Source of the DNA: Octopus sinensis
Lineage: Eukaryota
Length of the DNA stretch: 64,000 bases
NCBI RefSeq assembly: GCF_006345805.1
Contig: NC_043007.1
Coordinates: 58,218,001 to 58,282,000, forward strand
Direction: 5' to 3'
The notes beneath the pieces were generated by a model. The model was not told the origin of the DNA. It made no database searches and saw nothing but the letters and a program-made list of their open reading frames with translations. This document shows, piece by piece, positions 570 to 61,463 of the stretch (positions are counted from its first letter, which is position 1; every line of letters starts with the position of its first letter). The position numbers and the translations under genes are program-made.

Positions 570-1834
570 CAGGTTGGGGAAGCAAAACTTGGAAAATAAT
601 AGATAATTCACCAAATTGTTTATATTACAACAACCAGCAATCTGACATAAATACAATTATAACACAAGTGTATAAGGGTATAAAGAGAAATTTATTCAAT
701 ATGTCTGCCGTCATTGTCCACCACAGCCTTCATACGCCTGTTGAAGGCGTCACAACTCTTCATGATGAAGTACTCAGACATGTTGTCCCACTCTTCCCTC
801 AGGATTTGCTTAAGATGATGAAGACTTGGATGCGAAGTTCTGTTGGTAGAGTGCTCCAATTTGTTCCATAGAGCATAGTCCATGGAGTTCAAGTCTAGGC
901 TGGAAGAAAGCTAGAAGTTTGCAAGCCAAACATCAGCGAAGTTGTCTTCACAGAACTTCTGCACCTTCTTTGCTGTATAAGCAGGTGCACCATCTTGGGT
1001 CCACGCATAATTACCGTTGCAGTAGTTAGACTTCAGCCAAGGTAAAACCGTATACCGCAGAACTTTATAATAAACGTCAGTTCCCACCTTTACCCCAGAC
1101 TTGAAAAAATGAGAGGCATCTTTTTTCTGTCAGACGCTTCAACTCCCAGTATCATGACCTGAGCTGGGGGCTTGGTCCTAAAGGCGCCCTTTACTTCAGA
1201 AGGTGACTTAGCAATGCATCGATCATTGTGACGCTTTAAGACAATATCAGCGGTAAAGATATCTTTATCTGAAAAAAACCTGACGGCTTGTTCATTGTGC
1301 TTCAGGTATCGCAACACATTTTTGGCCCTTTCATGCTTTTTGTCTTTCATTGTATGAAAGGTGTTTCGGGGTCCTCACATATAAACCCAAATGTAAATCA
1401 GTGTGTACAGCATTTCTGATGGTCTTTGGATCAACATTCATGCCCGTGGACAGTTTTCTCATGGATGTTGTTGGGACTTCCAAAATTTTGGTTTTTAGAG
1501 AGTTAAAAATGCATTTTCCCGTTTTATATTTATGTTTCTACTCCCTTGCTTTCTCTTGATGCCTCCAATATCCTGCATTCAGTTCTGAACGTTGTAGACA
1601 TTGCTCACAGAGGCCCCAACAGTCTGAGCAATAGTCTAATTGCAACCCCGGCACGAAGCAAATCTGCAATGCGTTGTCTCTTGGCTTACTATTAAGTGGA
1701 CATGTTAGATCGTATGACTGGAATGTCTTCTTAAATTAACTCTATATACCTCTACCCTGAAATAGAAAGCAGTATTTTAGTACATATGAAAAAGAAGTCT
1801 TCCAAAATATTGCAAGTTTTGCTTCCCCACCCTG
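570..1834 (-). mobile_element. Full-length (1265 bp) maT/DD37D Tc1/mariner DNA transposon, defective
   Basis: TIR CAGGTTGGGGAAGCAAAACTTGG at 570 matches reverse complement of TGCAAGTTTTGCTTCCCCACCCTG ending 1834; TA on both sides; transposase on minus strand. Confidence 0.92.
692..1703 (-). pseudogene. DD37D transposase pseudogene
   Basis: ATG at 1703; KRQRIADLLRAG N-terminus, FFSD(K) first Asp, WTQDGAPAYTAKKVQKFCEDNFADVWLANF*LSSSLDLNSMDY (37 residues between second and third Asp), ends DGRHIE*. Stops and frameshifts present, e.g. TAG where a Trp codon is expected. Confidence 0.87.
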
Positions 1835-9620: not shown

Positions 9621-10179
9621 CGGCATCCTATAATGCCATTGGTATCCGAGGTTAGAGTCCACTTCCGTTTCAAGCCCCCATGCTATGTTTAGCTGAATTC
9701 CTTATTAATTTCTGCCACCAGTGGCTGCCACAGCGGTAACCTAACATTAATTATGAACCTTGCCACCCTCCATTATTCCGCACCCACTTCCTCCTTCTCC
9801 ATCTGTCCCGTCCATTCTCATTACACAAAAAACCTCTCCACCATCATCACCATCATCGCCATCAAGACAGTAGAATAAAGCCAAATATATTGTCTAAGGT
9901 TTAATATAATAATTTATCTTTCCCTTACCTATCCCTCAGTTTCTCAACATAAAACTCATTCCTCCATTCAGATTCAACTTTTCTTATAATTCATTTGCGC
10001 ATGTCTATAAGTGACTGCCTTCCACTCATTCACAAAACACACAGCATCACACACTCAGACACACACGCGAAAGAACATAAATCACTCTACTCTTCTCAGT
10101 GGTCGCTCTTTCTAAGATACTAGTCTTTCACAAACACATACATATATACATACACGCACTGTCCTCTCTCGTGATCTTT

Positions 10180-10400
10180 TATCTTTTATTTTTTACCTAT
10201 TTCAATCATTAGACTGCGGCCATGCTGGGGCAACGCCTTGAGCTTTTAGTCGAATGAATCGACTCCAGTACTTATTTTTTAAGTCTTATATTTATTCTAT
10301 CGGTTTTTTGCCGAACCGCTAAGTTACGGGGACGCAAACACACCAACATCAGTTGTCAAGAGGTGGTGGAAGATCAAATACAAGCACAAGACTCACATAT
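10180..10400 (-). mobile_element. SINE family A, 3' half
   Basis: Reverse complement of GACAACTGATGTTGGTGTG...GCGGTTCGGCAAA...CCCCAGCATGGCCGCAGTC. Confidence 0.85.
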
Positions 10401-11934: not shown

Positions 11935-12125
11935 GTGTTGACAACCGATGTTGGTGTGTTTACGCCTCCATAACTTAGCGGTTCGGCAAAAGAGACCGAT
12001 AAATAAGTACTAGGTTTACAAAGAATAAGTCCTAGGGTCGATTTGCTCGACTAAAGGCGGTGCTCCAGCATGCCCACAGTCAAATGACTGAAACAAGTAA
12101 AAGAGTAAAAGCGTAAGAGAGTAAA
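11935..12125 (+). mobile_element. SINE family A, 3' half with (GTAAAAGA)n end
   Basis: Near-identical to 61280-61464. Confidence 0.9.
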
Positions 12126-23954: not shown

Positions 23955-24315
23955 CATGCGGGACTAGTGTGGTAAAAAGCTTACTTCCCAACTACATGGT
24001 TCCGGGTTCAGCTCCACTGCGTAACACCTTGGGCAGAAAGAAGCCTGTCGTATATTTATCTTTATATATATATGTATATAACTGTGTGTGTCTTTTTGTC
24101 TGTGTTTGCCCCCTAGTACCGTTTAACAACCGATGTTGGTTTGTTTACCCCCCGTAACCTAGCGGTTCGGCAAAAATTATGATAGAATAAGTACCAGGCT
24201 TATAGAAAAAAAACGAAAAAAACAAGTAGTGAAGTTGATTTATTCAACTAAAAGTTCTTCAAGGCGATGCCCCAGCATGGCCGCAGTTAATGACTGGGAC
24301 TAGTAAATGATAAAG
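23955..24315 (+). mobile_element. SINE family A, near full length, diverged
   Basis: Head, (TA/TG) spacer, body and CCCCAGCATGGCCGCAG tail. Confidence 0.85.
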
Positions 24316-24941
24316 ATAACTATGTTTCTCGTTGCAGTGTTTTTATAACAAACACTGTCTATATATATACATGTGTGTGTGCGCGTATGTGTATGTGTTT
24401 GAGTTTCTCTGTTTGAGAGAGAAGGAGAGAAAGAAAGAGAGAGAGATTTCGCATACATATACATGCATGCTTCTGTGAATGATGGAATGCATGTTGAGGC
24501 ACAAAACATCATAACACACACTGACACTGTTACACAACCACAGGCACATAGGGACTCAGTGACTCATACACACATGCGCATACACACCTGCGTGCATGCA
24601 TGAGCAGACATATTGAAATAGTTGCAAAGACATACAAGTTTGTATTTAAAGCATTTCCGTTTCTTTATTAACAAATAGCAAAGAATAAACTATGCTGGAA
24701 ATAAAATGAAATCAATCACATAAGTTGTAAATATACATATATATATATATACATACACACACATATGTGTGTGTGCGCGTGTATGTATATATGCATATAT
24801 ACATGCATGTATGTATACACACATATACAGCGAGATACATGTATGAATATATATATGTGTATACGCATGTTTTGAAGCATATCCCTTTGTTTGTCAGTCT
24901 ATGTGAGTGAGCAGTTTTGGTTTCGTTTATGCGTTTTTCTT

Positions 24942-29220: not shown

Positions 29221-29376
29221 CTATATATATATATATAATTTAAATATAGGATAGAATCTTTATAAGAATTTATCAAGTCGTTTGCGTGAAAAACTTCATA
29301 AGGGAAAAATTATTATTCCTTTAAATATATTTGTTTATATTAAGGGCATTTATGTATAGTAATGCCCTTAATATAA

Positions 29377-29407
<31 letters not shown>

Positions 29408-29429
29408 ATATAAATATATAATATATGTA

Positions 29430-29491
<62 letters not shown>

Positions 29492-29513
29492 TATATATAT
29501 ATATATATATATG

Positions 29514-29553
<40 letters not shown>

Positions 29554-29754
29554 ATATATATATTATATATATATGCTCGAAATACTAAAGTAGAAAAACT
29601 GTCAACAACTGACGAAGGGTCGTTCTTTATGTTGTTTGTCTTTCCATTGTGTCTTTCGCTTTTCGAAAAAATAGCTCATATTCCATGTACTCGTATTTAG
29701 TAATTTTTTGTTGTACACGCTTCATGACGTCCTGTGCCCACATATATATATATA

Positions 29755-29798
<44 letters not shown>

Positions 29799-29800
<2 letters not shown>

Positions 29801-30399
29801 GCAAAATTAAGGAACGGCCATAATAGGCCGTTCAACCCACTAGAAATAGCAGCCAAGGCTTCAACCGCAAAACAATATTAATTCCGTAAACCAGGAGAAA
29901 ATTTAAAAAAACATTTACCCCGTAATACTTTATACAATGCATCGTTTCGTCTATTTTTTTAATGGTAAAACAACCTGATTAAATTAAATCAAGCTAATCT
30001 TCCATAGGCCAATAGATTCATCAGTAAAGTAAGCCAGACGGGACAGATATTTTCACGAGGCAGCACCACTACTGTCTCGGCTATATCTGACCTAAAATTT
30101 TCAAATCATCAATCGTACTCGCGCCAAATTTATCGGCAAATATAGCTGCCGATTTCCATTTCGGATTTAAACAGAAAATTCATAATTAATCAATATAGGT
30201 GGCAGAAAATTCAGCAGAAATTATTTGCCACCAGCGGCCTAGTGGGAAAAAAATAAATAGTCAGAGACTATTAATAAATTCAACAGCAAAATTAAGGAAC
30301 GGCCATAATAGGCCGTTCAACCCACTAGAAATAGCAGCCAAGGCTTCAACCGCAAAACAATATTAATTCCGTAAACCAGGAGAAAATTTAAAAAAACAT
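29799..30399 (-). mobile_element. Retrozyme-like element: 485-bp period, identical 116-bp terminal direct repeats, internal hammerhead
   Basis: 29799-29914 equals 30284-30399; flanked by (TA)n; hammerhead at 29926-30031; at least five further hairpins; no ORF. Confidence 0.8.
29926..30031 (-). ncRNA. Type I hammerhead ribozyme with long stem II and palindromic stem III
   Basis: Stem I TACTTTA/TAAAGTA (7 bp); CTGATGA (30024-30018); stem II TCTATT/AATAGA plus extended hairpin; GAAA (29948-29945); stem III ACGATGCATTGT; GUA triplet, predicted cut between 29933 and 29932. Only deviation is A10.1-C11.1. Confidence 0.82.
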
Positions 30400-30504
30400 G
30401 ATTAATTATATATATATATATATACATATTGATATATGTACATATACGTATGTATATATGCATATATATTATTTACATTATTTATATATATATATGCACC
30501 GGTA

Positions 30505-30590
30505 GGACTGGGATCGAGTCATTCAACTAAAATACTTCAGCGCAGTGCTCCAGCATGGCCGCAGTCTAATGACTGAAACAAGTAAAATAT
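30505..30590 (+). mobile_element. SINE family A tail fragment
   Basis: GCAGTGCTCCAGCATGGCCGCAGTCTAATGACTGAAACAAGTAAAA. Confidence 0.8.
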
Positions 30591-30603
30591 TAAAGATTAA
30601 GAC

Positions 30604-30662
<59 letters not shown>

Positions 30663-31227
30663 TGTGTGCGTGTGTGCGTGTGTGTGCGCGTGTGTGCGTG
30701 TGTGTGCGCGTGTGTATCTTGATCTTTAATCTTTTACATATAATATATATACTCAAACTATTTAGAAGCGCTGATTGAGTTCGTTTTTGCAGGAAATAAA
30801 GTAAATTTCGAACACGGAATAGCTGTGAAGCTGTGAAACTTAGATGATAGGGTGAAAAATAAGGTTATTTACCCTGTCTTAGAAGATGAAACAAAAATGG
30901 TCTCCAGTGAAGGTATTACAAATAATCGAACCTAGTATATTTCTCAAGTCCCGGGTGTGCGCTCTGTATCAGTAAGATAAGCGATCTCTATCAACAAATA
31001 CCGTCTTTTACAACGCTAAATAAGTTTTGGAATTTGAGAACATTAATTTATAAGGAAACTAGAAGTGCCAAGTGAGTTGGTATTCTACAGTAAATACATC
31101 AAAACGCAGTATAGTTGTGAAAACAACTTAGAATGTACAGGGTTCGATCTCCTGTAGCGGCTTGCTGCTCACTACTTTCCGTCTTCCAAGGGTATTTACC
31201 CTATCTTCTGTTTTCACAGCTATTTTG

Positions 31228-32646: not shown

Positions 32647-32890
32647 TATAAATATATAGACACATTTATTTATACGCATATAAATATATAGACACATTTA
32701 TTTATACGCATATATACATGTATGTGTGTATGTATGTATATACATTGATATATTTAAATATATATATATAATTTTCTATATATCTATAGATATATTTATA
32801 CACACACACAGAGGCACACACACACACACACACCCACACATATATATAACATATATATATATATATATCATATATATATATTATATATAT

Positions 32891-33222
32891 ACATATATAA
32901 TTTTCATGAAAGATGTTAATCTCTCAAAAGACAATTTCTCTCTTGCTGAAAACAATTCATGAATCCTGAATATCTTACCGTTCCAATCCAAACCCTTCTA
33001 GCCTCATATCACGTACTTATATTCGTGAAATCCCTACATTTTCCCTCCCCAATATAACCGCCATCAACACATCTACACCTCTCATAACTACCGACCGAAG
33101 TTTCTTCATCTCCATTTTTTCCTCGCATATATATTCTTACTTCATGAAATGTTTTCTTCATTATTCATTTTCAAGTATTCATACACACAAACCACACACA
33201 CACACACACACACACATATATA

Positions 33223-33268
<46 letters not shown>

Positions 33269-33580
33269 TAATTTTCATGAAAGATGTTAATTCTCTCAAA
33301 AGACAAATTTCTCCTTGCTGAAAACAATTCATGAATCCTGAATATCTTACCGTTCCAATCCAAACCCTTCTAGCCTCATATCACGTACTTATATTCGTGA
33401 AATCCCTACATTTTCCCTCCCCAATATAACCGCCATCAACACATCTACACCTCTCATAACTACCGAAGTTTCTTCATCTCCATTTTTTCCTCGCATATAT
33501 ATTTCTTACTTCATGAAATGTTTTCTTCATTATTCATTTTCAAGTATTCATACACACAAACACACACACACACACACACA
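32891..33580. repeat. Tandem duplication, period about 371 bp
   Basis: Copies start at 32891 and 33262 and differ only by small indels. Confidence 0.92.
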
Positions 33581-36294: not shown

Positions 36295-36500
36295 GTCTTA
36301 CCTTTTACTTGTTTTAAGCCTTTCGACTATGCGCCCATGCTGGGGCACCACTTTTAAAGGGTTTAGTTGGAACAAGTCAACCCCGGTGCTTATTTTTAAG
36401 CCAGATACTTATTCTTTTGATTGTGGTTATCTTTGTGCCGAACCGCGAAGTTACGGGAACGTAAACAAACCAACACCGATTTTTAAGTACAGGCACAAAC
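36295..36500 (-). mobile_element. SINE family A, 3' half
   Basis: Reverse complement of body and tail motifs. Confidence 0.8.
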
Positions 36501-39095: not shown

Positions 39096-39795
39096 GCTGT
39101 TCTCTCTCTTGTGGTTGCTGTTCTTGCTTTATGAAGGCATGTTATCTTTAACTCTTTAGCTGCTGGATTAAACAAGTGAAATTTAATAGTTAAAAGGTTA
39201 ACTTTATATAGAAACTACTCTATAAGAAAAGCACATATTTAATGATATACATTATTTTTCCTGTTTGAGAAGGAAAAAGCTTTTATTTTGTGAAAGAGCA
39301 GAACACACCAAAAAACTGGAATTATAACACACGTTTCTACAATAGAAAAAATACAAAGCATCAACAAGGAAGTTTTGTAGTAGAATACATAGAATTTAAA
39401 ATTAAAATAATGGCTTTTGATATGAAAATAACCGAACTAAAGTATAGAGTAGTGTTTGCCCAGCCTTTGTGACCGAGAGCAGGGGGAGGCGGAAATAGTG
39501 CGAAAGACATGCTCAGGTTTGTCTCACGATACATTGACTTACACAATACAATGGTGACAGTAGACAGTCTCAGGTATTGGCAACAAAATTGACCGCCAAG
39601 TTGTTGTCATCTTTGTAACGCAATATAGGCAAACGATGAGAACGGAACTGATAACAAAAGATATTTCGTTAGGTTTCGCAAGTTCTCATTACAAAAAAAT
39701 TTAATTACTTGTAGGGACAAACGTATATCGTTATGCAACCATAATATACTATCAAGTATATTAAACTCTTTATAAGTCAATTTTGTGTAGTGAAT

Positions 39796-39918
39796 CCAGC
39801 ACTGATTTTGTTACGACGTTTCGTATCAGAATGCGTCTAATGTAAACAACAATACAATTGAGAGGTTGTTTACACAAGACGTATTCGGACAGGAAACGTC
39901 GTAACAAATCAGTGCTGG
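39796..39918. repeat. Palindromic MITE-like hairpin (about 55-bp arms, 14-nt loop)
   Basis: CCAGCACTGATTTTGTTACGACGTTTC...GTAAACAAC / GTTGTTTACAC...GAAACGTCGTAACAAATCAGTGCTGG. Confidence 0.9.
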
Positions 39919-41399
39919 CTATAATTTCTATAGAAAATCTGTAGAGATAACCTTAACGTTTGGTGCAGTGTAAAAAGTCGTTATAATACTTGTGGCAACA
40001 AAAGCTACTTGGATTTCGAAGAAATGGAAAGTCAGAGACCAAAGGAAGCAGTGAAGAGCAACGATATCTAGAAGTCTTAGAGGCTGCTATTTCCCGAGAA
40101 CCACCGGTCGGACCTCCATAAACTGTAGAGGAGATCGCCACATCCACAGTGCCTGAAGCGAACAGGGACGAATACCGCATCCCAGCAGAAAGCCTCCCTC
40201 CAGCCCTTGCTATTTTCTTATGAGGATGGAGAGCGATTGAGTCTAGAGAAGACTGCTAAAGCAACGCAGAAAGAATAAAAGAAGGAACCAAATCAATGTT
40301 AACCCAGCCAGAAGACATCTAGACATGGAGAGAAGTTCTACAACCATGGCAAAAGAATGTAGCATCCTAAAAAAAAGGATGCTAGATCGTTGGAGCTTAC
40401 CCTCTGAGAATCTCTCTACTTTTCAGTTAGCTGATAAAATATTCATACTCTGTTGAACCTGATATTTAGAAATAGTAGAGGTTGAGTCACTTCAGGCTCA
40501 ACAAATCTAAGTTTATGAATGCATTTGGGTGCAGGTATAAGAAGCGGCAGACATTTCATGCTTTTGAAAACATTCTGATTTTATGCACTCATATATCTAT
40601 TTCGTCCTTACTTTGTATCAGAGTTTTAATATGTTCATTGCGTAATATTTTGCTCCTTGTTCCTTTTTTTATGTATTACTTTGTTTTTTCCATTTCCTCA
40701 CCTCTAGAAACCCTACGTCCACGTTTTTCTGTAGCATGTACAAATGGGATTTTGATGGCAACAAAATCATTACAAGTGTTATTGAAATTTTATTAGTGGA
40801 AATTTAACTTTTGCTTTCGTTACCCCCAATTTTACACGTCTTACCATTCACCACTAAGTGTGTATCTTCTCTTTCGTACTGATCTTTAATTTTCTCTTCT
40901 ATATTTGTTGCTGCAGGTGACGTTTTTAGAACGTTGTAAGGTTGAGCTGATGAGTTGTAAACGTACACACACATACAGACACACACGTATCGTATGTATG
41001 TATGCACCTCTTCTTCTTTTAAACTTAGAGTAGACTTTAATTGGCAATCGACTTGGTAGAAAGGAAAGTATTTTGATTTAATTGGCATCCTTTAAATCCT
41101 AAGAAGGCCCTGCAGATTTTTATAGTCCCATATCGTGACCATTTGTGGCATATTAATTTAGGATTTGCAGTCACTCCCCATAATTCCAAGTTTAGCCATA
41201 CTTTTCTCAAGAGGGATTGGTATGCATCTTGTTGCTCCAATATGTATGTATGTATGCATGTATGTATGCATGTATGTATGTATGTATGTATGTATGTATG
41301 CATGTATGTATGTATGTATGTATGTATGTATGTATGTATATGTATGTATGTATGAGTGCGCGCGCGCCCTGCGTATGAACTGAAGCCGCATCTGGTAGT

Positions 41400-46733: not shown

Positions 46734-47289
46734 GAGAGGGGCAAAATGATAATAGTAATAAGATTTAGGTGCATTCAGCCACGATCCATTCCTATTCAAA
46801 TTTCCCTTATCATACATATATGCACACAAAACTTCCTCTTCTGTTATACCCCAAGGGAACGTAATAGGACAAGTTTTGAAAGATGTAATACGCTACAGAA
46901 TAAATTCATAGATCTTAGACTGGCATTGGACAGTCAATAGGTATCTTTTAATTAATTAATTTAATTTACACACTGGTTTCTATCATGACATCAAAACGAA
47001 CACCGCTAACATGTCAATAATTTAATATTTTAAGAGGCGTTAATTTAAAAAAAATTAAATGTAATCAATATATTTTCATAAAAGATATATAGTCAAATAT
47101 TGGAAGATAGATAGGCAGATAGAGACTGACCTATGGAACAATGTAAAGAAAGTAAGGTTCCGGCATTTTTCTAAGCCCTTCCTTAAATCTCTAAATGACT
47201 ACATGACCAGCATTAAATAATCACCCAACACACACACCCTCGCGGACAAAACAAAGAACATTTACGAAATAAACACTTCCACACACTCA

Positions 47290-47830
47290 AGACTTCTTAC
47301 TAGTCCCATCACCAAAACATACAAGAAAACCCGTTATTCCACATACAATGACATAAATACAGACGCAAATGGGCTGGCCACCCGCTTTAATATAGAGGAT
47401 CGTTTGGACTGCCTCGTCACGCGACTCCCCCATATTATACTTAAGGACTATAAGCCCAAGTTCCCCTCCGATCTCAAATGCAGACTGATCAACGCCTCTA
47501 AATGTGAGATAGGTATCATTAGCAAATGTATTCTCGATACTATCAAATTCGATATCAGAAGATCTACAAGATTGATTCAATGGAACTCCGCAGTTTCGAG
47601 AATAAATCAGCCTGCAGATTCACCCAGTTCGACATTGTTGACTTCTGCCGTTCCATACCTAAACCCCTCCTTCTGAAAGCCCTAACTTTTACTGAGCAGT
47701 ACGATATCAGAATTACCATGAATGCCAGAAAGCCAATTTTGGTCTACGACTATTCTTTCTGGGTGACGAAAGAAGGCAATCTGTTGTTCGATGTCTCTAT
47801 GGGGAGCTTTGACAGGGCTAAAATCATATA
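47290..47830 (+). mobile_element. Penelope-like RT fragment
   Basis: ILKDYKPKFPSDLKCRLINASKCEIGIISKCILD...QWNS / FDIVDFCRSI..LLLKAL.F...ARK.IL...W.TK.GN.LFDVSMGSFD; ends abruptly at (GATA)n. Confidence 0.88.
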
Positions 47831-49987: not shown

Positions 49988-50950
49988 TTAGCTCGTCAAG
50001 TATGAAATTTGTACTAAGATATATGGTAAACTTTGACTGCTCATTTTGCGCCATTATTATATTTTGACAATCTTTATTTTTTGTGACATAGCTGACACAT
50101 CTATTTGTTTATCCTAACTCAAAGTGCCTGTGAATTATGGTTGTTGTTTGGTGTTAGCAAGCAAAAAATATTGACTCACCTAGTTCAAATCGGTAAAGTG
50201 AGAAAGTTGGATAGGTGGTTTCCACGTGAACTCAATGAAAATCAAAAACTGCAACGTTTGGAAGCCTGCATTATGCTACTTTCTCATCACAAAAATAAAT
50301 AATTTTTGAATAGAATTGTAACATATGAGAAATGAATCCAATACAACAACCGCAAACGTTCAGTGCAATGGTTGGACAGAGATGAGCCACCAAAACACAG
50401 TCCAAAAAGCAAATTTCATCAAAAGAAGCTGATGGTCTGTGTTTGTTGGTCTGGTACAAGTGTGATCCGTTATGATTTCATTAAACCTAGCTCATCAATC
50501 ACGGCCGAAGTATACTGCAGCCAACTGGACCAAATGATGCAGAAACTTACAAAAACAGCTTAGATTAGTCAACAGATCCACTCCTATTTTATTGCAAGAC
50601 AACGCCAGACCACACATTGCAAAAATGCGAAACTACAAGAGTTGGAGTTGGAAGTTCTCCATCATCCACCATACTCACCTGATCTTTCCGCCACTTCTTC
50701 CAGAATTTGGATAACTTTTTGATAGGAAAAAAATTAATTCAGACGATGCAGTAAAACAGGCCTTCCAAGATTTTATTGACTCTAGATTGCTAGGCTTTTA
50801 CAGTTCTGGGCTGGACAAGCTACCGCTGAAATGGCAAAAGTGTATTGACAATATGGGTGCATACTTTGATGAATAAAACTATTCCTTGTATTTATAAAAC
50901 ATTAGCAAACTTTATTTTCTTTTCCACAACTTTCATATTTGACGACCTAA
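49988..50950 (+). mobile_element. Mariner (DD34D-type) element, 5'-internally deleted, both TIRs present
   Basis: TA-TTAGCTCGTCAAGTATGAA / TTCATATTTGACGACCTAA-TA; motifs KLDRWFPREL, RIVT.EK.I.Y.N.KR..QW, KKLMVCVCW, LQDNARPH, HPPYSPDL, G.YFDE*. Confidence 0.92.
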
Positions 50951-56512: not shown

Positions 56513-57369
56513 TACATAGGGTATACGTTTGAACACACACGTGTTCTATCGTGACACGTAAAATACGCGAGTGAAAATTTATCCACATGCACACCTATAT
56601 ATCTACATCAATCAATGCAGGTAACCACAAAGATTTGAGTTGCCTTGACATAAACAAAAAGTCCTAGCTAGTTTTTAAGTATTTCTGAGACATTTTATAG
56701 AAACATACGCACATTCTCATGTTCATAGATATGCAATACACACCCATACACACGCACACACATATACACACACATATACACACACACACACACACACGAC
56801 ACTTGAAACATACGCAGGATCAGACATACCAATGTGTGACTCCGTACGCAGCTAGAAATATACATATACATTTCGATGGATGTATATGTGGGCAAATATA
56901 CACGCACACAATTCGCATACACACACAAACATTCACACACATACACACTGACATACACATGCACAGGTACAGGAGCGACATACATATGCATGCACAAAAG
57001 GTTTATGCATCAATCATACAAATTCAGAGACACGCACTTACACTAGGTGCAACGGACACACATAGAAAAAACTAATACATAGATGCACACAAAACATATA
57101 CATACATACAAACATACATACATCCATATACTTAATCATATACAAATACAGAAACGTATGCACTTTGAGGTTCATACATGAATGTGCACAGAGATAAACA
57201 TATACACTAAAGTAATACAATTACGCACTCAAACAGATACAGATTTATACAAACTCACGCATATATACAAGCATGTAAAAGAAGATACACTTTAGCCAGT
57301 CACTAACAAGCAAACATATATATATATATATTATATATGTATATAGATGTGTGAGTGTGTATAAAGATA

Positions 57370-57436
<67 letters not shown>

Positions 57437-57437
57437 C

Positions 57438-57485
<48 letters not shown>

Positions 57486-57492
57486 GTGTGTG

Positions 57493-57527
<35 letters not shown>

Positions 57528-57529
<2 letters not shown>

Positions 57530-60500
57530 ACACCCCAAATATCTCACCAGTGCTTCTGCTGAATGTCAGAGGTCTGGTGAAACCCACTAATATGAGTAAA
57601 ATTCCTTACCTTAGGGACTTAAGCACAAGCAACCATGCAATATGCATAGCGCTGACTGAAACGCACCTGTCAAGCAGTATAGCAGATGCAGAAATACACG
57701 TACCAAAGTATACTGTTTTTCGGTCAGACAGGAAGGAAAGAACTCATGGTGGGGTTGCCCTGTACGTCCGTGAAGATGTCACACCCATAGTACTGTTGAC
57801 ACACTCAAACTCAGTCTGTGACACACTGATAGTACACATGAAACAACCGAAAATAGTAATATGTGTCACATATCGGCCACCAGACACCCCTAGTCATGAA
57901 GGAGTGTTTGAAGATAGCCTCAGAAGAATAGAAGAAGTCCTGGACAAACTGGACCAGGGTAACACCATTCTACTGCTGGGAGATTTTAACCTTCCGAAAG
58001 TCAAATGGCCAGATGGCCATCTCCTCCCTGAATGACATCACTTGAACAGAGACAGACAGAGTCCTTGTTGGCTCTCACACGCAAGTTTTTCATGGAACAA
58101 GCAGTGCTTCGGCCAACAAGAGGTGAGAATGTCTTGGACCTCTGTTTCACAAGCAACCCGATGCTCATCCACAACATAATGGTAACACCTACAATTCTCT
58201 CAGATCACAACTTAGTAGAGGTAATGATATATGGTATGAGAGAGTTAGTTGAGACGCAGCCATTAGAAAATACCACAGGCCTATCCAGTCTAAACTTCCA
58301 TAAGGCAAACTGGAAGAAGATCAACGAAGAGATCCGAAAACATGACTGGAGTGACTTCATCACCACACAAGAGACCAACACACATTTCCAACATTTCATG
58401 ACAACAATACAGAACATATGCCATAAGTTTGTCCCGGAGAAAAAAGCCAGCGGCATAGGAACGTTATTCCCAGAGACAGGAAAATACTTATGAGGCGAAG
58501 AGCTAAGCTCTCGAAGCAACTGAATGCACGGCAGAGAAACAATAAGGGACTCCACCTGAAACTTTTTGAAACGGAAACTGCACTCAAACTTTCCTATGAG
58601 AAGGAGAGGGCAGAGAGAGAAGCCAGGGCCATAGAGAATATTAAAACAAACCCTAAAGCTTTCTTTAAATTTGCGAAAGAAACCACCTCGGTACACTGCA
58701 AGATTGGCCCACTCTTTGATAAAAAGGGCTCTCTAACTGAGGACCCCCAAGGGATAAGTGAAATACTAAAGGAACAGTATAAAAGTGTGTTCACATCCCC
58801 TCTGGGGCACATGCAAATCACAAACCCAGAAGTTTTCTTTGATGCCACAACACTCCAAAACCAAACAACCATCGACCACATAGACATAACAGAGAGGGAT
58901 GTAATATCTGCCATAGAAGAAATGAGAATAAACTCAGCTGCTGGACCAGATGGATTCCCAGCAGTCCTCCTAAAAACATGCAGGCATGCCCTAGCGGGAC
59001 CACTGAAGAAGCTCTTCAGTGGTTCCTTGGCTAACGGTAAACTGCCCAGGGCGCTAAAAGAAGGCACCATATGCCCTATCCACAAAGGAGGGAGTAGAGC
59101 AGAGGCCAAAAACTACAGGCCAGTCTCCCTGACGTCACACATAAGTAAGGTCATGGAACGAATCATCAGAAAAAAACTGATCACGTTCCTCGAAGAAACT
59201 AACCGTCCTCACTGACACACAGCATGGCTTTCGCCCAGGAAGAAGCTGCCTTACGCAGCTGTTACAACACTACGACTGGGTACTGAAAAACTACTGGATC
59301 GCTCACAGGTGGATGTGGTATATCTCGACTTTGCGAAGGCCTTTGACAAAGTCGACCACGGAGTGATATGTCACAAATTACTCAGACTCGGCATAACAGG
59401 AAAAGTAGGTGAGTGGATACATGACTTCCTGAAGGACAGAAGCCAGATGGTTGCAGCCAATGGAGCCCTCTCGGGAAAGACACCAATAGCAAGCGGGGTG
59501 CCACAGGGCACAGTCTTGGGACCCTTGCTGTTTTTGGTGGCGCTCTCTGACATGCCCTTGGTAGCACAAACAACATCCCTCACTAGCTATGCTGATGACA
59601 CAAAGGTAGCACAGGCAATTAAAAACCCAGCTGATGCTGACCTTTTACAACAAGATCTGGATGCCATATACAAATGGGCTGAAGAAAACAACATGCAATT
59701 TAATGCTGGTAAATTTCAAGCCTTACAATATCAAGCTGTAAACACATATACATTACAACACAACTATACTGGTCCAGGAGGGATCGAAATCCCAGTATCG
59801 AAATCAATACGGGACCTGGGGATAGACATGGGTGACGATGCATCTTTTTCTTCACACATCGCGAAGGTGGCGACAATGTGCAGACGGCTCACTGGCTGGA
59901 TCCTGAGGACATTCCGGACAAGAGACTGCGAGACCATGTTGACACTATGGAGGACATTTGTCCTAAGCCGCCTAGACTACTGCTCCCAACTGTGGTCACC
60001 GCATAGTGTCAAACTAACCACAGAGCTTGAGACAATCCAAAGACATTTCACCAAGAGGATTTCCACCATGAAAGAAAAGAACTATTGGGAGAGGCTTAGG
60101 GAACTCAATTTGTACTCCTTGGAACGAAGACGAGAGAGATATGCAGTGATATACATATGGAAAATCCTGGAGGGACTAGCACCAAATTTTGGAATTGAGA
60201 GCTGTTCCAATCCCCGTACAGGTCGTCACTGTGTGGTGCCAAAGGTCCCGTCTTCCACATCCAGGGTAAGGAGCAGATACTGTAATAGCCTGGGGTTCAG
60301 GGGCCCTCAGCTGTTCAACAAACTGCCAAGAAAACTAAGAGATCTACATGATGCGGATGTGGACATTTTCAAAAAACATCTAGACAAGCTGCTTTCCGGG
60401 ATCCCAGATGAACCCACTGCAAGGTACGAAGGTAACCTAAGGGCAGCAGCTACAAACTCTCTCTTAGATCAGTGGCCAGCCACGGCAAACTGGACTTAGA

Positions 60501-60576
60501 GAGGGTAGCAACAAGGGTGGTGCCCCAGCATGGCCTCAGCCGGATGGCTGAAACAAGTAAAAGAGTAAAAGAGTAA
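57528..60576 (+). mobile_element. CR1/L2-group LINE, 5' end at start of APE domain, intact 3' tail
   Basis: APE plus RT ORF, short 3' UTR with stem-loop and (GTAAAAGA)n end; (TA)n on both sides. Confidence 0.95.
57550..60499 (+). pseudogene. LINE ORF2 (AP endonuclease-reverse transcriptase) with four 1-bp frameshifts and no internal nonsense codon
   Basis: [51 protein letters not shown]; KNYRPVSLTS, QHGFRPGRSCLTQL, YLDFAKAFDKVDH, SGVPQGTVLGPLLF, SYADDTK, RDLGI. Frameshifts near 58030, 58455, 59206, 59290. Confidence 0.93.
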
Positions 60577-60590
60577 TATATATATATATA

Positions 60591-61002
60591 TCCCACTGCG
60601 TGCCATCTTGGACAAGTGTCTTCTACTATAGCCTCGGGCCAACCAAAGCCTTGTGTGTGGATTCGGTAGACGGAAACTGGAAGAAGCCCGTCGTATATGT
60701 ATATATATATGGGTGGGTGTGTGGGTGGGTGTTTGCCCGTGTTTATAAGCTAAAGAATGATCTCATCTGGAATCTAATGCGATTTTATTGAGATGTATGT
60801 GAAATGAAAATAGTTATATAGCCGCGTGATAACCGATAGTGGTGTGTTTAAGTCCTCGTAACTTAGCGGTTCGGCAAAAGAGACCGGTAGAATAAGTACT
60901 TGGCTTACACAGAATAAACTCTGGGGTCGATTTGCCCGACTAAAGGCAGTGCTCCAGCATGGTCGCATTCAAATGATTGAAATAAGTAAAAGAAAGAAAG
61001 AA
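60591..61002 (+). mobile_element. SINE family A, 5'-truncated, with a 73-bp foreign segment at 60743-60815
   Basis: Homologous to the adjacent copy 61020-61464 except for the replaced segment. Confidence 0.88.
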
Positions 61003-61246: not shown

Positions 61247-61463
61247 TTGTGTGTCTGTGTTTGTCCCCCTAGCATTGCTTGACAACCGATGGTGGTGTGT
61301 TTACGTCCCCGTCACTTAGCGGTTCGGCAAAAAGAAACCGATAGAATAAGTACTGGGCTTACAAAGAATAAGTCCCGGGGTCGATTTGCTCGACTAAAGG
61401 CGGTGCTCCAGCATGGCCGCAGTCAAATGACTGAAACAAGTAAAAGAGTAAAGAGTAAAAGAG

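What the first reader, a model, noticed from the sequence alone, without database searches (positions are those of the whole stretch)
29799..30399. Young retrozyme-like element: hammerhead ribozyme in a 485-nt structured unit with identical terminal repeats
Seen: 116-bp direct repeats (29799-29914, 30284-30399) are identical, so the element is 1.24 copies of a 485-bp monomer, sitting in (TA)n. The minus strand has a near-canonical type I hammerhead: 7-bp stem I, CUGAUGA, roughly 70-nt stem II hairpin, GAAA, loopless palindromic stem III ACGAUGCAUUGU, GUA cleavage triplet. The rest is packed with hairpins (29812-29833, 30057-30078, 30132-30153, 30198-30232, 30256-30272) and has no ORF. Established: Penelope-like elements carry type I hammerheads, palindromic stem III forms cleave as dimers, and metazoan non-LTR retrozymes are tandem hammerhead monomers that yield circular RNAs. 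Inference: this is a recently inserted non-autonomous retrozyme copied from a circular or multimeric RNA by a PLE RT. I do not know of such a family described in octopus, but cannot check.
Basis: partly seen in the sequence, partly recalled or inferred. Interest (0 to 1): 0.92.

Follow-up and report, generated by a model that had tools for sequence, protein, structure and literature searches.

The report
Hammerhead-ribozyme mobile element in cephalopod DNA
A 601-bp non-coding insertion in a TA microsatellite of a cephalopod genome carries one hammerhead self-cleaving RNA motif and looks like a young copy of a small parasite of Penelope-like retrotransposons; this kind is known in other animals, and I could not test copy number or activity.

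Summary
Positions 29799-29914 and 30284-30399 are identical 116-bp direct repeats, making 1.24 copies of a 485-bp non-coding unit inserted in (TA)n. The minus strand has all invariant hammerhead core bases, a type I topology and a palindromic helix III. My descriptor found this one site in the window and none in 300 shuffled windows at (5,4,3) bp or better. Extrapolated chance is about 3e-6 per window.

Three qualifications apply:
- No Rfam hammerhead model matches, even at E<=10.
- The conserved G10.1-C11.1 pair is an A.C mismatch.
- The ribozyme lies outside the duplicated 116 bp, so the locus has one hammerhead and cannot release a unit-length or circular RNA by itself.

The best reading is a recent insertion of a non-autonomous element mobilised by a Penelope-like element (PLE), copied from a more-than-unit-length RNA. 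The partial tandem, the AT-rich target with an ATT at the junction, and a stem-loop about 100 nt after the cut site all match published PLE biology. Whether the template was circular or a linear multimer is unresolved.

Copy number, stem covariation, cleavage and circRNA could not be tested, because no cephalopod genome was searchable. This would be a new member of a known kind, of moderate interest.

The parts
29799..30399 (-). Whole element: 601 bp, 1.24 copies of a 485-bp non-coding unit. The sense strand is taken as the minus strand, which carries the ribozyme.
30284..30399 (-). Terminal repeat, 5' copy in ribozyme sense (116 bp). It resembles a pseudo-LTR and contains no hammerhead.
   Evidence: 100% identical to 29799-29914
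29799..29914 (-). Terminal repeat, 3' copy in ribozyme sense (116 bp). It starts 18 nt after the cut site. Its last base is the inferred start of reverse transcription.
29916..30045 (-). Complete type I hammerhead domain, including the distal extension of helix I.
   Evidence: fold with hammerhead helices enforced is -29.2 kcal/mol against an MFE of -31.4; the only hit in the window and none in shuffles.
30038..30045 (-). Distal helix Ib, 5' strand (UGUCCCGU). It pairs with 29916-29923 beyond a 6x2-nt internal loop that could serve as loop 1.
   Evidence: forms in both the free and the constrained folds
30025..30031 (-). Helix I, 5' strand (UACUUUA). It pairs with 29926-29932 over 7 bp.
30018..30024 (-). 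Catalytic core C3-A9 (CUGAUGA).
29949..30017 (-). Helix II, a 69-nt extended hairpin. It has an A10.1.C11.1 mismatch, then 6 bp (UCUAUU/AAUAGA), an internal loop, and 17 further pairs including 4 G.U.
   Evidence: (z = -4.3)
29946..29948 (-). Core G12 A13 A14.
29934..29945 (-). Helix III, ACGAUGCAUUGU. It forms a 4-bp stem with a UGCA loop as a monomer, or a 12-bp duplex between two copies.
   Evidence: hairpin 0.0 kcal/mol, self-duplex -14.5 kcal/mol; palindrome.
29932..29933 (-). Predicted self-cleavage site: after A17 (29933) and before U1.1 (29932), with a GUA triplet.
   Evidence: Predicted from the motif, not tested.
29812..29833 (-). Perfect 8-bp GC-rich hairpin (GAACGGCC/GGCCGUUC). It lies 99 nt after the cut and 13 nt before the element's 3' end, and is a candidate RT-binding or initiation stem-loop. 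It is repeated at 30297-30318.
   Evidence: The analogy is to the PAc element in PMC11167929.
30132..30275 (.). Further hairpins in the body of the unit: 30132-30153, 30198-30232 and 30253-30275.
   Evidence: Whole-unit fold z is -3.8 to -4.0 (minus strand) and -6.8 to -7.9 (plus strand).
29742..29798 (.). Left target flank: (TA)28 followed by G.
30400..30495 (.). Right target flank: GATTAAT followed by an imperfect TA-rich microsatellite. ATT motifs occur only at this interruption of the array.

Best explanation
This is a single, evolutionarily recent insertion of a small non-coding retroelement with a 485-nt unit. The element carries a type I hammerhead ribozyme and depends on the reverse transcriptase and endonuclease of a Penelope-like element (PLE). 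That places it with the animal non-LTR retrozymes, or non-autonomous PLE derivatives.

Inferred sequence of events:
1. A master locus elsewhere in the genome is transcribed on the strand that corresponds to the window's minus strand.
2. A PLE endonuclease nicks AT-rich DNA at an ATT-containing interruption of a (TA)n array.
3. Reverse transcription starts internally on the RNA, just 3' of a GC-rich stem-loop about 100 nt downstream of the hammerhead.
4. It runs for 601 nt over a template longer than one unit, either a multimeric linear transcript or a circularised monomer.
5. The result is a unit flanked by a 116-bp terminal redundancy, which is a pseudo-LTR.

In the family, the hammerhead would cut multimeric transcripts to unit length, probably by pairing two copies through the palindromic helix III and possibly with protein help.

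This particular copy has only one hammerhead, with an A.C at 10.1/11.1. It is most likely a dead-end copy that cannot release a unit-length or circular RNA.

Shown: the anatomy, the statistics of the motif, the structuredness, the target site and the lack of coding capacity.
Inferred: retrotransposition, the PLE as the mobilising enzyme, the nature of the template, and any catalytic activity.
For: - Identical 116-bp repeats and a head-to-tail internal junction with no microsatellite, with both outer ends abutting TA arrays. This points to insertion of a terminally redundant unit, not local slippage.
- All invariant hammerhead core bases are present, with A15.1-U16.1, C15.2-G16.2 and H17 = A, in a type I topology. 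Helix I is 7 bp and extends through an internal loop into an 8-bp distal helix.
- The motif is the only one in the window. It was absent from 300 shuffles at (5,4,3) bp or better, and nothing above (5,4,3) appeared in 53.8 Mb of simulated sequence. For a pre-selected 601-bp element the chance is about 1e-7 to 1e-8.
- Helix III is palindromic. It is unstable as a hairpin (0.0) and strong as a duplex (-14.5 kcal/mol). This is the hallmark of metazoan type I and PLE hammerheads that cleave as dimers (PMC4209133, PMC6155905).
- The unit is non-coding, 35.7% GC and strongly self-paired. Its z-scores are -3.8 to -7.9, against +0.6 to -2.7 for 16 of 18 control folds. These match the listed retrozyme traits (PMC7229834).
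- The PLE parallels are partial-tandem pLTRs and a microsatellite/(TA)n bias (PMC8557442), a preference for AT-rich 5'-ATT-3' cleavage, internal RT initiation at a stem-loop about 85-92 nt 3' of the hammerhead cut, and multimeric RNA as the template (PMC11167929). Here the distances are 99 nt to the hairpin and 134 nt to the element's end, and ATT lies at the junction.
- Penelope elements are abundant in coleoid cephalopods and show octopus-specific expansions (PMC8967140). The window is cephalopod, with a LINE RT 63% identical to Argonauta hians.
- Monomeric retrozyme copies are common in other animals (bioRxiv 10.64898/2026.07.22.740005).
Against: - No Rfam hammerhead family matches at the gathering score or at E<=10. 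The 69-nt helix II probably explains this, but I could not show it.
- G10.1-C11.1, which is almost invariant in natural hammerheads, is A.C here.
- There is only one hammerhead at the locus, and it lies outside the repeat.
- No second copy exists in the 64-kb window. A neighbouring SINE-like repeat has 8 copies there.
- No copy turned up in any searchable collection. None of these collections holds cephalopod genomes, so that result says little.
- No PLE ORF is detectable in the window.
- At whole-genome scale, a motif of this quality is expected by chance about 0.1 to 1 times. The case therefore rests on its coincidence with the terminally redundant element.
- The hairpins are Watson-Crick palindromes that fold equally well on both strands. 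Strand-specific RNA selection is supported only weakly, by 7 G.U against 1 A.C in the hammerhead domain.
Confidence: 0.62

Rival explanations
1. The element is a genuine hammerhead-bearing repeat, but this locus arose or is represented at the DNA level. It could be a fragment of a 485-bp satellite-like tandem array moved by segmental duplication or by reintegration of extrachromosomal circular DNA. It could also be a longer tandem array collapsed by the assembler to 1.24 units.
For: Hammerheads in animals were first found in tandem 'satellite' repeats of similar size (PMC6155905, PMC7229834). Microsatellite-rich regions like this one assemble poorly (PMC8557442 makes this point for PLE tandems). 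Another local tandem duplication, with a 372-bp period, lies 2.4 kb away. Perfect identity of the two 116-bp copies is also what a collapse artefact would produce.
Against: The 372-bp duplication carries its microsatellites inside the unit. The hammerhead element instead has a clean head-to-tail junction, and both of its outer ends sit exactly at TA arrays, as expected for an insertion. Nothing in the window suggests a nearby array.
Confidence: 0.15
2. The hammerhead-like motif is a coincidence. The element is some other kind of short structured repeat or local duplication with no ribozyme ancestry.
For: Rfam finds no hammerhead. The 10.1/11.1 position is mismatched. Helix II is about 15 times longer than the canonical 4 bp. 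The unit is full of hairpins, which raises the odds of helix-like pairings. My extrapolation allows about 0.1 to 1 chance motifs of this quality per 2-3 Gb genome. Other strongly structured inverted repeats exist in the window.
Against: Chance within this particular 601-bp element is about 1e-7 to 1e-8. Features not required by my descriptor also fit natural metazoan type I hammerheads and PLE biology (PMC4209133, PMC11167929). These are the palindromic helix III, C15.2-G16.2, the internal-loop extension of helix I, the position about 100 nt upstream of a stem-loop near the 3' end, and the AT-rich target.
Confidence: 0.1
3. The element is a non-autonomous retroelement mobilised by a LINE (a SINE-like element, as with Schistosoma Sm-alpha) or by LTR-type machinery, rather than by a PLE.
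For: LINE RTs are the only RTs detectable in the window, and SINEs are very abundant in octopus genomes (PMC8967140). The plus strand ends in an A-rich stretch, AAAAAAACAT.
Against: There is no tRNA-like part and no poly(A) or simple-repeat tail on the ribozyme strand. More-than-unit terminal redundancy is not a LINE/SINE feature. There are no TG..CA ends, no primer-binding site next to the repeat and no polypurine tract (read directly). The hammerhead is type I, not the type III of plant LTR retrozymes.
Confidence: 0.08

Closest known systems
Metazoan non-LTR retrozymes (Cervera & de la Pena 2020, PMC7229834; mussel units are 350-390 bp)
   Same: A non-coding unit a few hundred bp long with low GC and strong self-pairing, carrying a type I hammerhead with a short palindromic helix III. 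Units join head to tail, the host is a mollusc, and the host lineage also holds PLEs.
   Different: There are only 1.24 units and one hammerhead at this locus, where the family is defined by two or more tandem hammerheads. Helix II is 69 nt rather than about 4 bp plus a loop. Position 10.1/11.1 is A.C. At 485 nt the unit exceeds the 170-400 nt range given for invertebrates, though it falls within the 51-972 bp reported in the 2026 preprint. No circRNA or copy-number data are available.
Pseudo-LTR / hammerhead region of Penelope-like elements (PMC4209133, PMC8557442, PMC11167929)
   Same: A partial-tandem insertion that creates direct terminal repeats, an AT-rich or microsatellite target with ATT at the junction, and a hammerhead followed about 100 nt later by a stem-loop near the point where the copy ends. 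The helix III is of the dimer type.
   Different: There is no RT/GIY-YIG ORF, the unit is 485 bp rather than 3-4 kb, and the hammerhead lies outside the repeated part. Typical PLE min-HHRs have a short helix I and lack helix III, whereas here helix I is long and helix III is present. No 30-40-bp 'tail' is recognisable.
Hammerhead-bearing satellite and SINE-like repeats (newt satellite 2, Schistosoma Sm-alpha; reviewed in PMC6155905)
   Same: Type I hammerheads embedded in non-coding repeats a few hundred bp long. The newt ribozyme cleaves as a dimer and needs an internally looped extension of helix I, which this motif also has.
   Different: Those repeats form long tandem arrays or high-copy SINE-like families with a pol III-type part. 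Here there is one isolated copy and no tRNA-like part.

Membership tests
Hammerhead ribozyme, type I | Invariant core: C3 U4 G5 A6 N7 G8 A9 and G12 A13 A14 | tested here: met
   CUGAUGA at 30024-30018 and GAA at 29948-29946 on the minus strand
Hammerhead ribozyme, type I | A15.1-U16.1 pair and a non-G base at position 17 before the cut | tested here: met
   A at 29945 pairs with U at 29934. C15.2-G16.2 is present. H17 is the A at 29933, giving a GUA triplet.
Hammerhead ribozyme, type I | Three helices around the core, with helix I open and helices II and III closed | tested here: met
   Helix I has 7 bp plus an 8-bp distal extension, helix II has 6 bp plus an extension, and helix III has 4 bp with a UGCA loop
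Hammerhead ribozyme, type I | Conserved G10.1-C11.1 pair at the base of helix II | tested here: not met
   A at 30017 lies opposite C at 29949, an A.C mismatch. No alternative register restores the pair.
Hammerhead ribozyme, type I | Match to curated covariance models (Rfam Hammerhead_1 and related families) | tested here: not met
   No hit at gathering score over the window. No hammerhead family at E<=10 over 29700-30500 with lax filters. The long helix II insert is a likely cause, but this is unproven.
Hammerhead ribozyme, type I | Tertiary contact between loop 1 and loop 2 | not testable with these tools
   Internal loops sit at suitable distances: 6x2 nt after 7 bp of helix I, and 5x6 nt after the base of helix II. 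Their interaction cannot be assessed from one sequence.
Hammerhead ribozyme, type I | Covariation in helices among homologues | not testable with these tools
   No homologue was obtained
Hammerhead ribozyme, type I | Site-specific self-cleavage | not testable with these tools
   Requires in vitro transcription
Metazoan non-LTR retrozyme | Tandem head-to-tail units, each with a type I hammerhead, so that two or more ribozymes flank a unit | tested here: not met
   There are 1.24 units. The hammerhead (30045-29916) lies outside the duplicated 116 bp, so the locus has one ribozyme.
Metazoan non-LTR retrozyme | Non-coding unit a few hundred bp long, with low GC and no LTR, PBS or PPT | tested here: met
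   485 bp at 35.7% GC. The longest open frame is 55 aa. No TG..CA ends and no tRNA-complementary site beside the repeats (sequence).
Metazoan non-LTR retrozyme | Highly self-paired unit RNA | tested here: met
   Circular-fold z is -3.8 for the ribozyme strand and -7.9 for its complement, with 61% of bases paired. Control segments mostly fall between +0.6 and -2.7.
Metazoan non-LTR retrozyme | Multi-copy dispersed family in the genome | not testable with these tools
   There is one copy in the 64-kb window, and no cephalopod genome was available to search
Metazoan non-LTR retrozyme | Expression as unit-length linear and circular RNA | not testable with these tools
   No transcriptome access
Penelope-like element (autonomous) | ORF encoding an RT plus a GIY-YIG endonuclease | tested here: not met
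   The element has no ORF, and no GIY-YIG domain was found anywhere among the window's ORFs
Penelope-like element (insertion signature) | Partial-tandem insertion forming pseudo-LTRs at an AT-rich or microsatellite target | tested here: met
   Identical 116-bp terminal redundancy, (TA)n on both sides, and ATT at the junction. Compared with PMC8557442 and PMC11167929.
Plant-type LTR retrozyme | Type III hammerheads inside both LTRs, a PBS and PPT, 4-bp target-site duplications and GC above 55% | tested here: not met
   The hammerhead is type I and outside the repeats. GC is 35.7%. There is no PBS or PPT.
tRNA-derived SINE with hammerhead (Sm-alpha type) | tRNA-like pol III promoter region | tested here: not met
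   ARAGORN finds nothing in 29300-30900

The most novel reading that the evidence does not exclude
This copy represents a currently active hammerhead retrozyme family in an octopod, not yet described in cephalopods, and the insertion preserves a footprint of ribozyme processing in vivo. Its 5' end (30399, equivalent to 29914) lies 18 nt after the predicted cut and 2 nt beyond the hammerhead domain. That is what would be expected if the template was a more-than-unit RNA whose 5' end had been made by self-cleavage of the upstream unit. The family's ribozyme would then be a natural type I hammerhead that tolerates a roughly 70-nt helix II, and perhaps an A.C at 10.1/11.1.
Probability: 0.15. Interest if true: 0.55.

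Novelty: new member of a known kind. Interest (0 to 1): 0.36.

Why it matters
If confirmed genome-wide, this would extend hammerhead-bearing retrozymes, or PLE parasites, to cephalopods. Those genomes are about half repeats and contain lineage-specific Penelope expansions. It would also add a natural hammerhead variant with a very long helix II, which current covariance models miss, so such elements may be under-counted in genome annotation. A young copy with precisely defined ends also gives a clean case for asking where PLE-type reverse transcription starts and stops relative to the ribozyme. It does not change the current picture of these elements.

Tried and rejected
- Rfam at gathering score on the window, and at E<=10 on 29700-30500, gave no ribozyme family. 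The sub-threshold miRNA-like hits (mir-1277, mir-297 and others) all fall on the TA microsatellites and are artefacts.
- blastn of the unit against the window (word size 7, E<=10) found no other copy.
- I joined all accidental ORF fragments of the element into one query against the 5.8-billion-protein collection, hoping to catch copies in Logan or ENA assemblies. Nothing scored E<=0.01.
- Exact-word DNA scans with three distinctive 22-24-mers found nothing: metagenome contigs twice, viral contigs once, prokaryotic genome contigs once. None of these collections holds animal genomes.
- Look-ups of three window ORFs, meant to retrieve the same locus from another assembly, failed because none is on record.
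- DNA around the closest LINE-RT relatives (L001 from an ENA metagenome, L002 from Argonauta hians) contains no unit homology and no hammerhead motif.
- A search for a PLE in the window found only APE-type LINE fragments and mariner-type transposase fragments. An RT-like frameshifted ORF at 47221-47828 has just six unannotated relatives.
- Strand assignment from fold z-scores was uninformative, because both strands fold well. The G.U against A.C asymmetry (7 to 1) is confounded by the G+U-rich composition of the minus strand.
- A tRNA-SINE origin is rejected. An LTR-type or TRIM origin is rejected because there is no PBS, PPT or TG..CA. A MITE or DNA-transposon origin is rejected because the only terminal inverted repeats are the TA flanks.
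- I looked for an alternative register that would restore G10.1-C11.1, or would give the single 5' bulge typical of PLE hammerheads. None exists.
Full report
**What is in the sequence**

Positions 29799-29914 and 30284-30399 are 116-bp direct repeats, 100% identical and 485 bp apart. The bases just outside the two copies differ. The feature is therefore 601 bp, or 1.24 copies of a 485-bp unit.

It lies between a (TA)28 array (29742-29797) and an imperfect TA-rich array (about 30407-30495). The internal junction (30283|30284) joins the end of the unit directly to its beginning, with no microsatellite between them. A 372-bp tandem duplication 2.4 kb away differs in this respect, because its microsatellites are part of the repeated unit. 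So the element looks like an inserted, terminally redundant unit and not like local slippage.

The unit is 35.7% GC, the same as the window. Its longest stop-to-stop frame is 55 aa.

**The hammerhead**

On the minus strand the motif reads as follows:

| Part | Coordinates | Notes |
|---|---|---|
| Helix I | 30031-30025 / 29932-29926 | UACUUUA/UAAAGUA, 7 bp |
| Core | 30024-30018 | CUGAUGA |
| Position 10.1 | 30017 | A |
| Helix II base | 30016-30011 / 29955-29950 | UCUAUU/AAUAGA, 6 bp |
| Position 11.1 | 29949 | C |
| GAA | 29948-29946 | |
| Helix III | 29945-29934 | ACGA-UGCA-UUGU |
| H17 | 29933 | A; cut predicted between 29933 and 29932 |

- Helix II continues as a 69-nt hairpin that is very stable for its composition (z = -4.3).
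- Helix I continues, beyond a 6x2-nt internal loop, into an 8-bp distal helix (30045-30038 / 29923-29916). That helix forms in both free and constrained folds. Work on the newt hammerhead found such an internally looped extension of helix I to be needed for monomer activity (PMC6155905).
- With the three helices enforced, the 139-nt domain folds at -29.2 kcal/mol, against an unconstrained minimum of -31.4.
- Helix III alone does not fold (0.0 kcal/mol), but two copies pair at -14.5 kcal/mol. This matches the published description of metazoan type I hammerheads, which have a short helix III with a palindromic loop and cleave efficiently only as dimers (PMC4209133, PMC6155905).

**Is it more than chance?**

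I wrote a descriptor requiring CUGANGA, GAAA, A15.1-U16.1 and H17 other than G. It allows helix II inserts up to 90 nt and one mismatch at 10.1/11.1.

| Minimum bp in helices (I, II, III) | Result |
|---|---|
| Real window, from (4,3,2) up to (7,6,4) | exactly this one site in both strands |
| (4,3,2) in 300 dinucleotide shuffles | 0.057 hits per window |
| (5,4,3) or better in 300 shuffles | 0 hits |
| (4,3,2) in 53.8 Mb of first-order Markov sequence | 0.045 per window |
| (5,4,3) in the same simulation | 0.0012 per window |
| Better than (5,4,3) in the same simulation | 0 hits |

Each added base pair therefore costs a factor of about 0.3. Extrapolated to the observed (7,6,4), the rate is about 3e-6 per 64-kb window. 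That amounts to roughly 0.1 to 1 chance occurrences in a 2-3 Gb genome, and about 1e-7 to 1e-8 within a pre-selected 601-bp element.

The motif alone would be borderline at genome scale. Its coincidence with an independently odd, terminally redundant element is not.

**What counts against a canonical hammerhead**

- Rfam 15 reports no hammerhead family at the gathering score over the whole window. It reports none at E<=10 with lax filters over 29700-30500 either. Everything it lists there is microsatellite noise. I suspect the 57-nt distal insert in helix II is the cause, but I could not submit a trimmed sequence to test that.
- The almost invariant G10.1-C11.1 pair is an A.C mismatch. One G-to-A transition would account for it, and no other register repairs it. 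From general knowledge of hammerhead mutagenesis I expect reduced activity, not necessarily none.

**One ribozyme, not two**

The whole hammerhead domain (30045-29916) lies in the non-duplicated part of the element and ends 2 nt before the 3' repeat copy begins. The locus therefore holds a single hammerhead.

Retrozymes are defined by units flanked by ribozymes, so that a unit-length RNA can be excised and circularised (PMC7229834). This locus cannot do that. It is best seen as a 'monomer-plus' daughter copy. The 2026 preprint on animal retrozymes reports that such monomeric copies are common and treats them as non-transposing offspring (bioRxiv 10.64898/2026.07.22.740005).

**Structure of the rest of the unit**

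The one at 30057-30078 is imperfect.

| Fold | z-score | Source |
|---|---|---|
| 485-nt unit as released by cleavage, ribozyme strand, linear | -4.0 | |
| Same, circular | -3.8 | |
| Complement, linear | -6.8 | |
| Complement, circular | -7.9 | |
| Nine non-repetitive control segments of the window, both strands | +0.6 to -2.7 in 16 of 18 folds | |
| Control segment 39501-39985 (holds a 44-nt-arm inverted repeat) | -8 to -11 | |

The unit is unusually structured, but because the hairpins are Watson-Crick palindromes the folds do not identify the functional strand. The hammerhead domain has 7 G.U pairs against one A.C on the minus strand. That leans towards RNA-level structure on that strand, but the strand's G+U-rich composition confounds it.

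**How it most likely got there**

Published work on Penelope-like elements describes the following:
- Insertions are partial tandems that create pseudo-LTRs.
- They show a bias for microsatellites, including (TA)n.
- The hammerhead lies in the pLTR near the 3' end (PMC8557442, PMC4209133).

For the Anolis element PAc, biochemistry shows (PMC11167929):
- The endonuclease cuts AT-rich DNA, with a preference for 5'-ATT-3'.
- Reverse transcription starts internally at a stem-loop about 85-92 nt downstream of the hammerhead cut.
- The main template is unprocessed multimeric RNA.
- The hammerhead is protein-assisted and is not needed for insertion.

The geometry here is similar:
- The cut site is followed after 99 nt by the strongest hairpin of the unit, a perfect 8-bp GC-rich stem at 29833-29812.
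- The element ends 13 nt later, 134 nt after the cut.
- The junctions read ...TATATATG|element|GATTAATTATATA.... The insertion therefore sits at an ATT-containing interruption of an array that otherwise contains no ATT.

These parallels are suggestive, not proof. They make a PLE the most likely mobilising machinery and a more-than-unit RNA the template. A circular template is possible but not required.

Penelope elements are abundant in coleoid cephalopods and show octopus-specific expansions (PMC8967140).

**Age**

The repeats show zero differences in 116 bp. That puts a 95% upper bound of about 2.6% on the divergence between them. At an assumed 2-4e-9 substitutions per site per year, this corresponds to at most a few million years. 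This is my inference, and the rate is assumed.

**Organism**

The window's APE-type LINE (57355-60499) has an RT whose best relatives are an ENA metagenome scaffold (73% identity) and a protein of the octopod Argonauta hians (63%). The window is therefore cephalopod and probably octopod, but I could not determine the species. Its own genome is evidently not in the protein collection.

**What could not be done**

The key tests are copy number, covariation, circular permutation of ends and presence/absence polymorphism. All need the host genome, and no cephalopod genome was searchable by DNA. Indirect routes all failed:
- ORF-fragment search.
- Exact-word scans.
- Same-locus look-ups.
- Sampling relatives' loci.

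Within the window the unit is single-copy, while the adjacent SINE-like repeat (30496-30605) has seven more copies. The family, if it exists, is therefore not of SINE-like abundance. I found no paper reporting hammerheads or retrozymes in cephalopods in the searchable library.

**Verdict**

The element works like, and probably derives from, the retrozyme/PLE-pLTR kind of element. This locus fails the defining 'tandem ribozymes' criterion, though, and the ribozyme fails two membership tests: the Rfam models and the 10.1-11.1 pair.

It is a new member of a known kind. A specialist would find it plausible rather than surprising. The long helix II and the clean, young insertion ends are its most useful aspects.

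Noticed in passing
window 29914/30399 relative to 29932: The 5' end of the insertion in ribozyme sense corresponds to a point 18 nt after the predicted cleavage site and 2 nt after the last base of the hammerhead domain. By chance this has roughly a 4-8% probability. It could mean the template's 5' end was made by self-cleavage, or that the RT stopped at the base of the folded ribozyme.
   Followed up: partly
window 32818-33580: A 372-bp-period tandem duplication (2.1 copies, 95% matches). Its unit includes (AC)n and (AT)n microsatellites plus about 280 bp of unique sequence. It probably arose by unequal exchange between arrays, and it has no hammerhead motif.
   Followed up: partly
window 39501-39985 (inverted repeat 39807-39850 / 39865-39908): This segment folds with z = -8 to -11 on both strands because of a 44-nt-arm inverted repeat (86% complementary, 14-nt spacer). 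It may be a MITE-like or hairpin element.
   Followed up: partly
window 30496-30605, and 10178-10272, 12057-12109, 24242-24317, 36303-36348, 60520-60569, 60946-60991, 61400-61458: A SINE-like repeat immediately right of the TA array has seven further copies or fragments in the window at 79-92% identity.
   Followed up: partly
window 57355-60499 (+): A frameshifted APE-type LINE with Exo_endo_phos and RVT_1 domains. The RT part is 63% identical to an Argonauta hians protein and 73% identical to a scaffold in an ENA metagenome, which may be cephalopod DNA contaminating that sample.
   Followed up: partly
window 47221-47828 (+): Two overlapping frames encode RT-like motifs (CRLINASK...ISK and FDIVDF...SIP) with no Pfam match. 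Only six short, unannotated relatives exist in the 5.8-billion-protein collection. The type of element is unknown.
   Followed up: partly
window 50336-50560 (+) and about 695-1374 (-): Mariner-type transposase fragments. The first matches Pfam Transposase_1 at E = 5e-22. I recognised the second by eye only; Pfam gave no hit.
   Followed up: partly
window 29576-29741: A 166-bp island of unique sequence between two (TA)n arrays, just left of the element. It is single-copy in the window, shows no similarity to the element, and its origin is unknown.
   Followed up: partly
window 29722-29813 and 30403-30500: The sub-threshold Rfam 'miRNA' matches (mir-1277, mir-297, mir-3149 and others; 43 bits or less against gathering scores of 75-100) are hairpins formed by the TA microsatellites, not genes.
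   Followed up: yes
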